NCBI GenBank assembly: GCA_964252035.1
Contig: OZ176200.1
DNA: 64,000 nucleotides
Reading direction: 5' to 3' (one strand)
Source: Podarcis erhardii
Taxonomy: Eukaryota
Part shown: piece by piece, positions 22,317 to 54,415 of the stretch
Layout of the letters: each line of letters starts with the position of its first letter
Position numbering within the stretch: position 1 is the first letter of the stretch
Notes under the pieces: generated by a model
Databases searched by the model: none
What the model saw: only the letters and a program-made list of their open reading frames with translations
What the model was told of the DNA's origin: nothing
Program-made: the position numbers and the translations under genes

Positions 22317-23935
22317 GTGAGTCTGATAGTGGAAGGTTTCATTCCCCCCCCCCATTCTAAGAGATAAAACCCTGCGCTTTGTCCTCCCCTTTCTTACATC
22401 AGCTGTGATTTATGTAGTGTTTGAATTAACAGTAATGGGCAAATGGCAACAGCCCAGTAGCTCTTTGTACCCAACCACAAACATAAAGTAAGCAGTTGTG
22501 TGCCCCTGTCTTCAGGGCCTGATTGCAGATCTTAACCTGATGTGCTCATTATGCCGCAGAGACAAGTCAAGCTTTAGGATAAATGTGAGCATCCCATCAT
22601 CATCATCATAAATAACAATCATCTCACTGAGCAATGAAGTTAAGTGGGAGTTTATTTCCCATGGATTTCCACCCTCTTTAACTGCCCACACTTGCCAAGG
22701 AAACAGCGTATTTACAAGAATTTTTAAATGTCATGAATTAAGAATTGATGGCTCAGTGGGAAGTCTTCGATGCGCCAGGTTCAGCAGACTACAATTAATT
22801 TTCAAGTTTATCTGTTGCTGTGATCTGCAGGGATGCCTCCACATGGAAGCAACTTGGAACTACAGCCGCTCAGCTGCTATTTCACACAGTACTTCTTTGG
22901 TTCATGATACAGATTGGGTCTGAGCTAAGTTGCAGGTGTATTTGATGGCAATATGAAATCTTGGGATGTGGCTGACATTCTCTGTTCTTGGGATTGGAAG
23001 CAACTTCAGGAGCCCATAAAAGCTCTCCTCAAAGGAGACATGAGGTTTACATGCCCCAAAATTCTTCTCCGGCTTGGATCAGAATTTGAGGCTAAGAAGA
23101 ATTCCTGGCTGACTCCATTTCCATCTCTTTCCCCATTAACCCACCCAAGAAATTGCACTCCCCCTTTCCTCCACTTACCTTGCAAAACTGGAACATAATA
23201 AGCTACCTTTACGGAGACAGATCATTGGTCCATCCAGCAATAAGGTATTGCCCTGAACCTGATATTTTCTGCCCCTGGATTTATTCTCCCTTTCTCTCTT
23301 CTAGGGAAAGACATACCTTGGATGCCTTAGCATGCTCTGTGTAAAAGGAACACACATTTCCTTGGCTTTGCTTTGCCCCCTAATTACCCAAATATTTCCC
23401 CACATTTCTCTCCATACTGTTAGCTTCCCAACATTTTAAAGCCCTGCAATACAATTGCAGTTTATAAGGAAAATAATGTGAGAAATTAGCTTCCTTCTTC
23501 TTGGCTCTATGAATGCCAACACTTTTACTTACTTGCTCCTCTTTAGCAACATAAAATGCACAACTGTATTAACCCTTACCTTAATAATCCAGGCCTTCTG
23601 TGTTTTAAGCCTTCATGAACATGAAAAGTACAATTAACACCTGACCTTCATAGCATATCTGCTGAGTTCTGCAGAAGAAAACCTGATAAGAAATACAATT
23701 GTGTTTATAATAGTAAAATTGTTCTTAGTTTTTCCCCCTTCCCAAGTAATAGCATCTTGAATTTTCTAACAGATGAAAATTACTGTATTCTGTTTTAAAG
23801 TTTTAGCAAGTGTCACTCTGTTACCACACTTTTCAGCTTTCTGAGTCTACTACCCATAGCACCACAGTTGTCTTGGGTGCACCAAACCTTTAACATGCAT
23901 GAATTACAACTTTATGAATGTTACCAAATTCAAAA

Positions 23936-25472
23936 AGAAGCAAGTGTGGTGTAGTGGTTAAGAGCGATAGACTCGTAATCTGGGGAACCGGGTTCACGTC
24001 TCCGCTCCTCCACATGCAGCTGTTGGGTGTCCTTAGGCCAGTCACACTTCTCTGAAGTCTCTCAGCCCCACTCACCTCACAGAGTGTTTGTTGCGTGTCA
24101 ATACCCCTCCCCCCCCCCAGAAATAAAGACACAGGAGACGTTGATTAAGTTAATTGGGCATGAAAGGCCACAACTTTATTGATTAGAGAATTGAAGGTAT
24201 TGGCCTTAGGCATTGGCACCTATCCAATACCCGGCATGGTGACCGGGATGGGTTAACACGAACCGTGGGGGTCCTGTTGAAGTACGCCAACTAGGATCCC
24301 ACGGGTGTCACCGCTCAGGGGCGTGCCGGAGGCCCTTACCTTCCCAGGTTTCGGACAAGACAACGCCCCCCGGAGTCCTTTACCGGACTACCCCTTTTCT
24401 TGGGGAAGGTGATGGCGTACCTTCCCCCCGATCCATTTGCATAACAATTGAACCCCCAGCCAATGCCTAACCGCCAATACTAAAGAAAGTTGTGACGTTT
24501 GCTACGAGGTAGGCGAAAAAACCAAAAGGCCGTAAGTTCGCCAACTTGGAAAAATTCCTACCAGGCCCCTTGCGGCGACCAACCGAAGTCCATAGCAAGG
24601 TCATATCTACCTAAGCTAACCTATACCTAAGGGTGGGTGGGACGGGAAAACCTCTCAGCTGGCCAGGAGTGAAGAGGGTGGTCCCTGGGCGTGCCTGGCC
24701 TTAAGTATGCCAAGGCCACGCCTCCCCCAGCCCGCCGATTGGCGGACGGGTGGAAGGCACGCCCAGGGATTCCCCCAACTCTCGCGGGGGCAGCAGGCCA
24801 GCCCCCGCGCTTGGGGGGAGGGGCAAGACCGCAACCCCCTCTCTTCCCCCATGGGGTCAGAAATGGCTTTGCGTGTCAATACCCCTCCCTCCCCAGAAAT
24901 AAAGACACAGGAGACGTTGATTAAGTTAATTGGGCATGAAAGGCCACAACTTTATTGATTAGAGAATTGAAGGTATTGGCCTTAGGCATTGGCACCTATC
25001 CACTACCCGGCATGGTGACCGGGATGGGTTAACACGAACCGTGGGGGTCCTGTTGAAGTACGCCAACTAGGATCCCACGGGTGTCACCGCTCGGGGGCGT
25101 GCCGGAGGCCCTTACCTTCCCAGGTTTCGGACAAGACAACGCCCCCCGGAGTCCTTTACCGGACTACCCCTTTTCTTAAGAGGGTGGTCCCTGGGCGTGC
25201 CTGGCCTTAAGTATGCCAAGGCCACGCCTCCCCCAGCCCGCCGATTGGCGGACGGGTGGAAGGCACGCCCAGGGATTCCCCCAACTCTCGCGGGGGCAGC
25301 AGGCCAGCCCCCGCGCTTGGGGGGAGGGGCAAGACCGCAACCCCCTCTCTTCCCCCATGGGGTCAGAAATGGCTTTGTGGGGGAGGAAGGGAAAGGAGAA
25401 TGTTAGCCGCTTTGAGACTCCTACGGGTAGTGCTAAAGCAGGACATCAAATCCAAACTCTGCTTCTCTTCTA
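23936..25472 (+). mobile_element. tRNA-derived SINE with (CTT)n tail (Squam2-like), split by an insertion
   Basis: Box A TGGTGTAGTGG and box B-like GGGTTCAC; 5' half 23936-24093 and 3' half 25378-25472 reconstitute the intact copies at 51472 and 54158. Confidence 0.88.
24094..25377 (+). mobile_element. Non-autonomous split-direct-repeat element (A1-X-B1-A2-B2), probable Ngaro/PAT-type tyrosine-recombinase retrotransposon derivative
   Basis: A1 24094-24401 matches A2 24872-25177; B1 24672-24871 matches B2 25178-25377; unique X 24402-24671; TTG at both borders and at the internal B1/A2 junction; no TG..CA ends. Confidence 0.7.
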
Positions 25473-27278
25473 TGTACCAAAGGAGAGGTTACTGGAGGCA
25501 AATAGTACATCGCATCTAGAATCCACAGTTGGGGGGTCCTAGTACAGGGATGGTGAACCTGTGACCCTCCAGATAGTCTTGGACTCCAACTCCCATCAAC
25601 CCCAGCCAGCATGGACAATAGTCAGTGATGATGAGCGTTGTAGTCCAGCAACCTCTCCCCATCCTGGAATGCCTTAGACATTTGAGGTTGCCGTGGTCCA
25701 GAAACACATTTACAACAGAGATAAAGGATATTATGTTGTGTCGAAGTCTTCAGGTTTGGCCACATTTCTCGACAGCTTGGATTTATGAGTCAATTTGTAC
25801 AGTAGAGATACATCTCATCCACAAGTGTACAAGATCTTAGGAGTCCTAGCGTTTTGCAACTTCTAAGTGAAGTGCAGCCATCAAGGAGATTATCAGGTCC
25901 TAACAAAGAGGTAAACCTGTATACCCAGTCTCTTCTGAAAGCTTACGAGCTAATCTCTTAATGGATGCAATGGGGCCACTATTCAGGTGCCTTCAGCTCT
26001 GCAGTTCTCTGATCTCTTGTGAAATATAACTTTGCTTTTAGCATTTTGATTCTCATAGATTTTTCTAAGGATATCAACTTTGTTTCCAATTTAAAGAATG
26101 TGCAACATGCAGCATTGAGCATGCGGATATTTGGGCTCTTACATTTTTATTGTTTACCATAAAGAAGCACTTAGGAAAATTGGAACGCATTATGCTCATG
26201 TATTTACACTGCATGGAAAGCACTATTAGAAATGTCACTGTTTTTACATTGATGAAAAATAAGATTAACAATTTAAAGGAAACACAGTGCACAAGGTTTG
26301 CTGTTCAAGATTTGTCATTGGGATTTTTATTCTGTTTAATTTTGCTGGGGGGATTTTTTCAGTGTCATTTGAACATCTTCTTAATTCTTTATTTATTTCC
26401 AATTAATCGAATAACCTTTATCTATTTCCAAATAATCACAATCATACTCAAACCATATCAATTTCAGTGAGAGAGTTAATGTTGAGTAAACCTTCCTAGG
26501 CACGTACTATGGACTTAGCTGCATTAGTCAAGAAAAAGCATTTTAAAAGCGTTATAACACTGATACCCCAGATGGCACTGTGGAATTCCATCTTTTGGCA
26601 ACGTGATTTCCCGTTATGAGGTTTACAACACATTTTCCTTATTTTTATTTTTTTAATGTGCCTAAATCCAGCCTATATCTCAAGCCCTGTTCAGGTTTTG
26701 TACCCCACTCAATCACCATTCTCACAAGACTCCACATGAACTTGTGTAACAGGGAGTCTTTTCCATTCAAAGCATTTTTATATCACTTTAAAAGCCATGG
26801 TTTCTTTTCCGCCTCGAAGAATCCCAGGATCTGGTGAAGGGTGCTGAGAAGCTATCATTAGGAGAACCTTATTCCCCTCACAAAGCTACAGTTTCCAGAG
26901 TTTCCTAGGAAGAGGGGTTGACTTTTAAACCATACTGTGAATTGTAGCTCTGTGAGGGGTATAGGTGCCCGCTAACAACTCCCAGCGCTTTTAGCAAACT
27001 GGATTCTTTCAGACAGGGAACCACGACTGGTAAAGTGCTGAGATGAGAAGTCTGGAGATGATCCTCCAGACTTCTGAATTGTGTGAAGAGCCTTGCATGC
27101 CGCTATGTTTTACTCAGAGTAGAGCCACTGAAATCGATGACCCCAAGTTAGCCATGCCTGTTAATTGCAGTGGGTCTACTCTGAGTTGGGCTTGCACTGA
27201 ACACAACTCTAAATGAGAGGTGCAAGCTCCCTGCTGCAGAAGAGCAACCCTCTCAGCATGTGGAGGAGTGCAAAAGCA

Positions 27279-51471: not shown

Positions 51472-51722
51472 GAGAGCCAGTGTGGTGTAGTGGTTAAGAG
51501 CGGTAGACTCGTAATCTGGAGAACTGGGTTCGTGTCCCTGCTCCTCCACAGGCAGCTGCTGGGTGACCTTGGGCCAGTCACATTTCTCTGAAGTCTCTCA
51601 GCCCCACTCACCTCACAGAGTGTTTGTTGTGGGGGAGGAAGGGAAAGGAGATTGTTAGCCGCTTTGAGACTCCTTTGGGTACTGATACAGTGACATATCA
51701 AATCCAAACTCTTCTTCTTCTT
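51472..51722 (+). mobile_element. tRNA-derived SINE with (CTT)n tail (Squam2-like), full length
   Basis: Pol III box A and B, same body as 23936 and 54158, ends ccaaactcttcttcttctt. Confidence 0.92.
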
Positions 51723-51799
51723 CTGACAGGTGTTAATAGTCAGTGCAAGAGCTAGGCTTTCAAAGTCAAAACCCCCAGCCCTGTGAACTGAACCCAGAA

Positions 51800-54140: not shown

Positions 54141-54157
54141 TGTCTCTTCGTAGACAA

Positions 54158-54415
54158 GAGAGCCAGTGTGGTATAGTGGTTAAGAGTGGTGGACTCGTAA
54201 TCTGGTGAACCGGGTTCGCATCTCCGCTCCTCCACATGCAGCTGCTGGGTGACCTTGGGCTAGTCATACTTCTTTGAAGTCTCTCAGCCTCACTCACCTC
54301 ACAGAGTGTTTGTTGTGGGTGGAGGAAGGGAAAGGAGAATGTTAGCCGCTTTGAGGCTCCTTTGGGTAGTGATAAAGCGGGATATCAAATCCAAACTCTT
54401 CTTCTTCTCTTCTTC
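54158..54415 (+). mobile_element. tRNA-derived SINE with (CTT)n tail (Squam2-like), full length
   Basis: Near-identical to 51472-51722. Confidence 0.92.

What the first reader, a model, noticed from the sequence alone, without database searches (positions are those of the whole stretch)
24094..25377. Young ORF-less element with split direct repeats (A1-X-B1-A2-B2): candidate miniature Ngaro/PAT-type tyrosine-recombinase retrotransposon
Seen: A1 (308 bp) and A2 (306 bp) differ by about two substitutions plus a poly-C length change; B1 and B2 (200 bp) look identical; X is unique (270 bp). The element splits a SINE at gtttg-TTG-tggggg. The same TTG lies at the internal B1/A2 junction (ggct-TTG-cgtg), and there are no TG..CA ends. 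Established: split direct repeats in this order and integration without an integrase-type TSD are hallmarks of PAT/Ngaro YR retrotransposons, which are thought to use circular intermediates. Inference: a minimal, recently active non-autonomous parasite of such an element that integrates by crossover at a TTG core. An alternative is two tandem LTR-like units, one with a deletion of X.
Basis: partly seen in the sequence, partly recalled or inferred. Interest (0 to 1): 0.75.

Follow-up and report, generated by a model that had tools for sequence, protein, structure and literature searches.

The report
Miniature coding-free Ngaro-type lizard retroelement
A young 1.28-kb jumping-gene remnant in a wall-lizard genome encodes no protein but has the repeat layout and three-letter border mark of tyrosine-recombinase (Ngaro/DIRS-type) retrotransposons. 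It is most likely a small parasite of those elements, a new example of a known kind.

Summary
The layout is A1 (24094-24401), X (24402-24671), B1 (24672-24871), A2 (24872-25177) and B2 (25178-25377). A1 and A2 differ by 3 substitutions and a 2-nt poly-C change; B1 and B2 are identical. The element splits a tRNA-type SINE. Two intact SINE copies in the window show one TTG at the empty site. The filled site has TTG on both sides and at the B1/A2 junction.

This layout and border mark are the published hallmarks of DIRS-order elements, and A1-[internal]-B1A2B2 is the Ngaro layout. No ORF, Pfam or Rfam signal was found.

Public contigs show a family. About 7-19 near-identical copies occur in each of two species, older relatives of the A/X core are much more abundant, and an RNA-like contig crosses X-B-A.

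Three things remain untested: an autonomous partner with the same ends, TTG borders in other copies, and the sense strand. The direct A-to-B joint was not seen in other samples, so most copies may be plain A-X-B.

Other windows of this genome were already flagged for Ngaro elements, a TTG crossover and coding-free relatives (unchecked notes).

Verdict: probably a non-autonomous Ngaro-type element, a new member of a known kind.

The parts
23935..24093 (+). Left part of the host tRNA-derived SINE, ending in the target TTG (24091-24093)
   Evidence: 87-92% identical SINE copies at about 51.5 kb and 54.2 kb. Alignment with the intact copies. Weak tRNA-like match at 23940-24012 (below threshold). 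Very high depth in all runs.
24094..24401 (+). A1, first copy of repeat A (308 nt). It has AATAAA at 24122 on the + strand and at 24175-24180 on the - strand, and four CCAAT/ATTGG boxes at 24153-24228.
   Evidence: At position 24227 its 'A' is private: every laid contig carries the A2 state.
24402..24671 (+). X, the unique internal segment (270 nt), with no ORF over 45 aa. A 9-bp (DNA fold) to 10-bp (RNA fold) hairpin lies at 24402-24427, a high-copy core at 24466-24624, and a purine-rich tract at 24665-24681 across the X/B border.
   Evidence: overall fold z = -0.7 on both strands; hairpin z about -3.1 to -3.3. Depth profile.
24672..24871 (+). B1, first copy of repeat B (200 nt, 69% GC, ATTGG and CCACGCC boxes), ending in TTG (24869-24871)
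24830..24873 (.). Imperfect palindrome (CGCAA...CCCCATGGGG...TTGCG). Its right arm contains the junction TTG and the first bases of A, so it is complete only when B is joined to A.
   Evidence: I3, 26-nt arms, 77% complementary. (DNA hairpin z = -2.2 on + and -3.0 on -).
24872..25177 (+). A2, second copy of repeat A (306 nt). It matches the family consensus at the positions where A1 and A2 differ.
25178..25377 (+). B2, second copy of repeat B (200 nt, identical to B1), joined directly to A2 and ending in TTG (25375-25377)
   Evidence: The A2|B2 joint itself was not seen in any of the four runs laid.
25378..25470 (+). Right part of the host SINE, resuming at TGGGGG

Best explanation
This is a recently inserted, non-autonomous member of the tyrosine-recombinase retrotransposons (DIRS order) with the Ngaro-type split-direct-repeat layout A1-[X]-B1A2B2. 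The coding body has been reduced to a 270-nt non-coding X.

Inferred mechanism: an RNA of the element is reverse-transcribed by enzymes supplied by an autonomous Ngaro of the same genome. The internal B1-TTG-A2 junction serves as the template that restores the ends and gives a closed circle. The partner's tyrosine recombinase then crosses the circle's B-TTG-A junction with a TTG in the target. This leaves one TTG on each side and makes no integrase-type duplication.

Shown here: the layout, the youth of the copy, the single TTG in the empty site, the three TTGs in the filled site, the lack of coding capacity and the existence of a multi-copy family in several species.

Inferred: the reverse transcription, the circle, the recombinase and the identity of the partner.
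For: - Layout and identities.
- Empty site with a single TTG, against TTG at both borders and at the B1/A2 junction.
- Published definitions: Ngaro is A1 at the 5' end and B1, A2, B2 at the 3' end, with Xenopus repeats of 236 and 152 bp, close to the 308 and 200 bp here (PMC9210276; PMC8547959). [quoted passage not shown]
- A palindrome that is complete only across the B/A junction.
- No ORF over 110 aa, no Pfam or Rfam family, no A-tail, no TIR and no TG..CA ends.
- Youth: CpG observed/expected is 0.62 in the element against 0.14-0.27 in the flanks.
- Family: exact-match contigs over the A/X and X/B junctions and inside B have 7-19 times the single-copy flank depth in two organisms whose flanks differ by 0.45% and 2.7% from the window. 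Four organism labels hold 55-65% of the element's 31-mers. An RNA-like contig of a second species runs X-B-TTG-A.
- Short or non-autonomous derivatives of this order are known: SIRE of VIPER (PMC6681497) and TOC1 (10.1101/2022.06.16.496473).
- Unchecked notes of this scan report complete Ngaro elements, a TTG crossover with a palindromic circle junction, solo A-B units and coding-free relatives elsewhere in this genome.
Against: - No autonomous element sharing A and B could be examined, so the link to a recombinase rests on architecture alone.
- Only one insertion site was seen, and a 3-nt match has about a 1/64 chance.
- The A2|B2 joint of this locus is absent from the listed joints of three contig sets. 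One other copy has a different A-to-B breakpoint at single-copy depth. B depth is about equal to the depth of the X junctions, not twice it. Most young copies may therefore be A-X-B rather than A-X-B-A-B.
- The + strand has an AATAAA 29 nt into A that a full-length + RNA would have to read through. The RNA reads are strand-biased, but the library type is unknown, so the sense strand is open.
- A 3-nt crossover core is short for a tyrosine recombinase.
Confidence: 0.65

Rival explanations
1. The normal family member is a single A-X-B unit of 778 bp with TTG at the closure. This locus is a two-unit form: one full unit followed by one unit that lacks X. It arose from a dimeric or heterodimeric circle, from a second integration into the B/A junction of the first, or in a retrovirus-like way. 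In the retrovirus-like version the LTR equals B+A, a one-LTR circle gives A-X-B, and a two-LTR circle opened at the TTG inside the LTR gives A-X-B-A-B. Integration is still by site-specific crossover at TTG, but the split repeats are not an inherited feature of every copy.
For: From: the A-to-B joint is missing or rare and its breakpoints vary (24398>24658 at single-copy depth in X1). The exact A/X and X/B junction contigs are at about 7-13 copies. The B to X-junction depth ratio is about 1. The low-copy block (X tail, B and the first 54 nt of A) is contiguous across the B-TTG-A junction, as a fast-changing U3-like region would be. From: AATAAA lies 29 nt after the B/A junction, a purine-rich tract sits at the X/B border, and B is GC-rich with CCAAT and GC boxes.
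Against: Contigs drop rare joints, so their absence proves little. The precise A-B unit next to an A-X-B unit is exactly the canonical Ngaro 3' end. A-X-B copies are also expected from B1/B2 recombination of canonical copies. An integrated permuted copy would lack a promoter upstream of X in this model.
Confidence: 0.2
2. Two tandem solo LTRs of an ordinary integrase-type LTR retrotransposon or endogenous retrovirus, one with X deleted.
For: Direct repeats of LTR-like size with promoter-like and poly(A) motifs.
Against: No TG..CA ends. At most a 3-nt flanking repeat instead of 4-6 bp. The same 3 nt also sit at the internal junction, which a staggered-cut duplication does not explain.
Confidence: 0.05
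3. An assembly artefact: the real locus is a plain A-X-B insertion or something else, and the A2-B2 part is a mis-join of repeat copies.
For: The A2|B2 joint and the A1-specific base at 24227 were not found in any contig of a sample whose flank differs from the window by only 0.45%.
Against: The A2-B2 unit ends exactly at the SINE breakpoint with the expected TTG. A1 and A2 carry distinct variants. The layout is biologically canonical. Contig sets drop rare variants, and the sample is probably another individual.
Confidence: 0.05

Closest known systems
Ngaro retrotransposons (DIRS order), e.g. DIRS-53_XT of Xenopus tropicalis and zebrafish Ngaro1
   Same: Split direct repeats in the order A1-[internal]-B1A2B2. 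Repeat sizes of a few hundred bp (236 and 152 bp in Xenopus, 308 and 200 bp here). No integrase-type duplication. Vertebrate host.
   Different: No gag, RT/RNase H, YR or SGNH-hydrolase ORF; the internal part is 270 non-coding nt. Sequence similarity to any Ngaro was not tested.
SIRE, the short interspersed element derived from VIPER in Trypanosoma cruzi
   Same: A short, coding-free sequence made of the terminal repeats of a tyrosine-recombinase retrotransposon. It is abundant, and whether it moves or is only a remnant is debated (PMC6681497).
   Different: SIRE corresponds to A2+B2 only, a solo-type unit. This element keeps the full A1-X-B1A2B2 set. The host and superfamily also differ.
TOC1, a non-autonomous PAT-like DIRS element of Chlamydomonas, with TOC3 as the coding relative
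   Same: A non-autonomous member of the same order with split repeats, known to be active (10.1101/2022.06.16.496473).
   Different: By my recollection, not checked here, TOC1 is several kb long. It is an algal, PAT-type element. This one is 1.28 kb and in an amniote.
TRIM and SMART miniature LTR retrotransposons (from general knowledge)
   Same: Terminal repeats around a very short non-coding core, mobilised in trans.
   Different: Those have plain LTRs with TG..CA ends, a PBS and PPT, and 5-bp duplications made by a DDE integrase.

Membership tests
Ngaro / split-repeat DIRS-order retrotransposons | Split direct repeats: A1 at the 5' end and B1-A2-B2 together at the 3' end, with A1=A2 and B1=B2 | tested here: met
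   the A copies are 98-99% identical and the B copies 100% identical, in the order A1-X-B1-A2-B2 on the + strand. The sense strand is not established.
Ngaro / split-repeat DIRS-order retrotransposons | [quoted passage not shown] | tested here: met
   one TTG in two intact SINE copies, and TTG at both borders and at B1/A2. This is one locus only.
Ngaro / split-repeat DIRS-order retrotransposons | Encodes a tyrosine recombinase and RT/RNase H or, for a non-autonomous member, shares its ends with an element that does | not testable with these tools
   No ORF or Pfam hit in the element or the window. The ORF probe and the pattern scans were blank.
Ngaro / split-repeat DIRS-order retrotransposons | Other copies repeat the same layout and borders | tested here: inconclusive
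   the family is present at about 7-19 near-identical copies in two species, and an X-B-A contig occurs in a second species. However, the A|B joint was not seen, and one variant joint sits at single-copy depth.
Ngaro as opposed to PAT-like | No methyltransferase domain; internal repeats downstream of YR; phylogeny of RT/YR | not testable with these tools
   The element has no coding sequence. Ngaro is preferred only because vertebrates, and by unchecked scan notes this genome, carry Ngaro.
Integrase-type LTR retrotransposon / solo LTR | TG..CA ends and a 4-6 bp target duplication | tested here: not met
   the ends read CGTG...TTTG. Only 3 nt are shared, and those are repeated at the internal junction.
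LINE-dependent SINE or retroposon | 3' A-rich or microsatellite tail, a variable duplication, an internal pol III promoter | tested here: not met
   no tail at either end on either strand; no tRNA, 7SL or 5S match inside the element.
Retrozyme or ribozyme-bearing circular RNA element | Hammerhead or HDV-like self-cleaving ribozyme in the repeats | tested here: not met
   no ribozyme family up to E = 10 on either strand.

The most novel reading that the evidence does not exclude
The family may replicate like a small LTR element whose LTR is B+A: B is promoter-like, a poly(A) signal lies just past the junction, and a purine tract precedes B. It would be inserted as a circle by a tyrosine recombinase that cuts at a TTG inside the LTR. 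One-LTR circles would then give A-X-B copies and two-LTR circles A-X-B-A-B copies, with a freshly made, variable A|B joint in each. If so, the genomic copies are a natural record of the long-postulated but never observed circular intermediates of Ngaro elements. The split repeats would be a by-product of which circle was integrated, not a fixed part of the element.
Probability: 0.15. Interest if true: 0.65.

Novelty: new member of a known kind. Interest (0 to 1): 0.4.

Why it matters
How tyrosine-recombinase retrotransposons replicate and integrate is still largely a model. The circle has not been captured, and the crossover site is inferred from a few families. This family is 1.28 kb, coding-free, recently active, and has a readable empty site, a clean three-letter core and near-identical copies in several wall-lizard species. 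That makes it a convenient natural substrate for testing the model by insertion polymorphism, circle detection and transcript mapping. It would also document trans-mobilisation of a miniature Ngaro derivative in an amniote. It does not reveal a new kind of element.

Tried and rejected
No other loci could be fetched that way.
- The search for homologous proteins with the same ORF, used as a probe for called ORFs on other copies, returned no candidate.
- An exact 20-nt pattern from the high-copy X core found nothing in metagenome contigs or viral contigs. Neither collection is expected to hold lizard DNA.
- The search of earlier findings by sequence and by relatives was blank.
- Rfam at E up to 10 gave only sub-threshold microRNA-like noise and no ribozyme or tRNA inside the element.
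- Pfam on the eight largest window ORFs gave nothing, so the window holds no RT or YR fragment to use as a bridge.
- RNA folding of X gave z = -0.7 on both strands, so there is no significant global structure.
- I could not settle the sense strand. Both strands carry an AATAAA in A. The raw RNA reads are strand-biased over the X core (17.5 against 0.2), but the library's strand convention is unknown.
- I did not test a primer-binding-site match to a tRNA, because no lizard tRNA set was at hand and sequences from memory are unreliable.
- I rejected the Helitron, MITE and LINE-dependent readings on end structure.

Full report
**What is there**

- A1 is 24094-24401 (308 nt).
- X is 24402-24671 (270 nt, present once).
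- B1 is 24672-24871 (200 nt).
- A2 is 24872-25177 (306 nt).
- B2 is 25178-25377 (200 nt).

A1 and A2 differ by three substitutions (one inside the poly-C run, plus 24227 and 24317) and a 2-nt poly-C length change. B1 and B2 are identical. No other copy of A, X or B lies in the 64-kb window. The window has no N.

**The insertion site**

The element sits in a tRNA-derived SINE. Two uninterrupted copies of that SINE in the same window (about 51.6 and 54.3 kb, 87-92% identical) read GTTTG-TTG-TGGGGG across the breakpoint. The empty site therefore has one TTG.

The filled site has TTG directly before A1 (24091-24093) and as the last three bases of B2 (25375-25377). The same TTG forms the B1/A2 junction (24869-24871). 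A staggered-cut duplication would explain the two outer TTGs but not the inner one. A crossover between a TTG in the target and the TTG of a closed B-TTG-A junction explains all three. With one locus, the 3-nt match alone has a chance probability of about 1/64. No further similarity between the target and the junction was seen by eye.

**What it does not contain**

- No ORF exceeds 110 aa, and the longest ones run out into the flank.
- Rfam at E up to 10 finds no ribozyme, tRNA or other plausible family inside the element.
- There are no TG..CA ends, no terminal inverted repeats and no A-rich or microsatellite tail on either strand.
- The eight largest ORFs of the window have no Pfam family, so the window holds no RT or recombinase fragment.

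**Features inside the element**

- CpG observed/expected is 0.62 in the element against 0.14-0.27 in the flanks, which fits a young insertion in a methylated genome.
- B is 69% GC and carries ATTGG and CCACGCC boxes.
- A has four CCAAT/ATTGG boxes at 24153-24228. It has one AATAAA on the + strand 29 nt after its start, and one AATAAA on the - strand at 24175-24180.
- A purine-rich tract (24665-24681) spans the X/B border.
- A hairpin of 9 bp (DNA fold) to 10 bp (RNA fold) directly follows A1 (24402-24427; z about -3.1 to -3.3).
- An imperfect palindrome at 24830-24873 has the junction TTG and the first bases of A in its right arm. It is therefore complete only where B is joined to A (z = -2.2 on + and -3.0 on -).
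- X as a whole has no significant fold on either strand (z = -0.7).

**The family, from public runs**

Twenty runs under four organism labels hold 51-65% of the element's sampled 31-mers.

I laid the contigs of two DNA-like runs, the contigs of one RNA-like run and the raw reads of one RNA run on 23300-24885. That stretch covers the left flank, A1, X, B1 and 14 nt of A2, so it has no internal duplicate.

The unique flank has word depth 85.7 in X1 (3 differences in 669 nt, so the window's species or very close to it) and 81.5 in X6 (18 differences in 668 nt, so another species).

| Exact or near-exact contig | Run | Depth | Approx. multiple of flank |
|---|---|---|---|
| A1/X junction | X1 | 891 | 10 |
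| A1/X junction | X6 | 1089 | 13 |
| X/B1 junction | X1 | 590 | 7 |
| Inside B | X1 | 773 | 9 |
| Inside B | X6 | 930-1570 | 11-19 |

So each species has roughly 7-19 near-identical copies. The tool warns that summed depths are not copy numbers, so I use only single-contig depths relative to the flank, and only as rough figures. The copies in the second species differ from this one by about 0.5%, much less than the 2.7% of the flank. That fits activity after or around the species split.

At 90% identity or better the picture is a mosaic.
- The block from about position 55 of A to about position 222 of X (24148-24624) reaches hundreds to thousands of flank-equivalents.
- The X tail, B and the first 54 nt of A reach only tens to about two hundred. 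These three pieces are contiguous across the B-TTG-A junction.

An older and much larger family therefore shares the A/X core. The junction-proximal block is specific to the young subfamily.

**Signs of transcription**

The RNA-like contig set (X4) has no depth on the unique flank but holds the element. One 495-nt contig runs from the end of X through B and the TTG into A, with 3 substitutions and 3 gaps. Relative to the DNA runs, B is about ten times over-represented compared with the X core. That suggests the young subfamily is transcribed, although 'RNA' is only a guess for that run.

The raw RNA run gives low, strand-biased coverage (17.5 against 0.2 over the X core). I do not know the library's strand convention, so the sense strand stays open.

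**What speaks against a simple reading**

- The direct A-to-B joint of this locus would appear as a 270-nt skip from 24401 to 24672. It is not among the 15 listed joints of any run (one further joint was not shown).
- One other joint, 24398 to 24658 with one extra base, stands at single-copy depth in X1. At least one other copy therefore joins A to B at a different breakpoint.
- B depth is about equal to the depth of the X junctions, not twice it.
- The A1-specific base at 24227 has zero depth in both DNA runs.
- Both exact B contigs stop at 24870, one base before the final G. I cannot explain this.

Contigs drop rare variants and prove no absence. Taken at face value, though, most young copies are A-X-B (or longer) rather than A-X-B-A-B. 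This insertion may also be absent from the sampled individuals.

**Comparison with what is known**

Ngaro, PAT-like and VIPER elements are defined by split direct repeats. In Ngaro, A1 is at the 5' end and B1, A2 and B2 are at the 3' end. The Xenopus element DIRS-53_XT has repeats of 236 and 152 bp (PMC9210276; also PMC8547959, PMC4157794 and PMC3783388).

For DIRS-order elements, a species-specific trinucleotide at the circle junction is thought to define integration sites. [quoted passage not shown] TTT and GTT cases have been reported (PMC9210276). The present locus shows exactly this pattern with TTG.

Solo A-B units are known from Cafeteria Ngaros (PMC8547959). Short or non-autonomous derivatives of the order are also known: SIRE of VIPER, which equals A2+B2 (PMC6681497), and TOC1 (10.1101/2022.06.16.496473). 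My literature searches found no description of a miniature Ngaro derivative in lizards, but the held library is incomplete.

**Earlier notes of this scan**

Unchecked notes on other windows of the same genome call it a wall lizard. They report:
- complete Ngaro elements;
- a TTG crossover with a palindromic circle junction in one of them;
- 'A-ORFs-B' and solo 'A-B' states;
- a coding-free relative of about 0.9 kb.

These agree with my reading. The TTG and palindrome note matches what I see here. I could not read those sequences, so they are leads and not evidence.

**Verdict**

The most likely explanation (0.65) is a young, non-autonomous Ngaro-type split-repeat retroelement integrated by crossover at TTG. 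The layout, the site and the family are shown. The reverse transcription, the circle, the recombinase and the partner are inferred.

The main rival (0.2) keeps the same integration chemistry. It takes A-X-B as the normal unit and this locus as a two-unit (two-LTR-circle-like or dimeric) form. Tandem ordinary LTRs (0.05) and a mis-assembly (0.05) are unlikely.

This is a new member of a known kind. Its interest is moderate, mainly as a handy substrate for testing the integration model.

- The single read-laying run and the single run search were used.
- The genome itself could not be searched.

Noticed in passing
window 24466-24624: The core of X is by far the most repeated part of the element. 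Summed contig depth at 90% identity or better is 220,000-460,000 against about 85 for the unique flank, with many diverged variants visible as loose ends. It may be a cis-acting module shared with a much larger and older family, or with the autonomous Ngaro 3' region.
   Followed up: partly
window 24870/24871: In two species the exact-match B contigs both end at 24870, one base before the G of the terminal TTG. The assembly graph therefore branches inside the supposed core, which could mean that some copies end in TTT plus a base other than G.
   Followed up: no
window 25571-25654: A sub-threshold match to the mir-5408 precursor family on the - strand (31.6 bits against a gathering score of 90, E = 0.004). 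It lies in a repeat-like stretch about 100 nt beyond the end of the host SINE and is probably another interspersed repeat that forms a hairpin.
   Followed up: no
window 51475-51723 and 54156-54405: Two further copies of the same tRNA-derived SINE, 87-92% identical to the interrupted one. They served as empty-site references. The depth of this SINE in the runs is of the order of 100,000 flank-equivalents.
   Followed up: partly
RNA-like run X4, contig record 12: A 1958-nt contig whose last 132 nt match A positions 70-198 at about 91%, preceded by about 1.8 kb that does not match this element. It is a candidate longer relative, possibly a coding element of another subfamily ending in an A-like repeat. 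Its sequence could not be read here.
   Followed up: no
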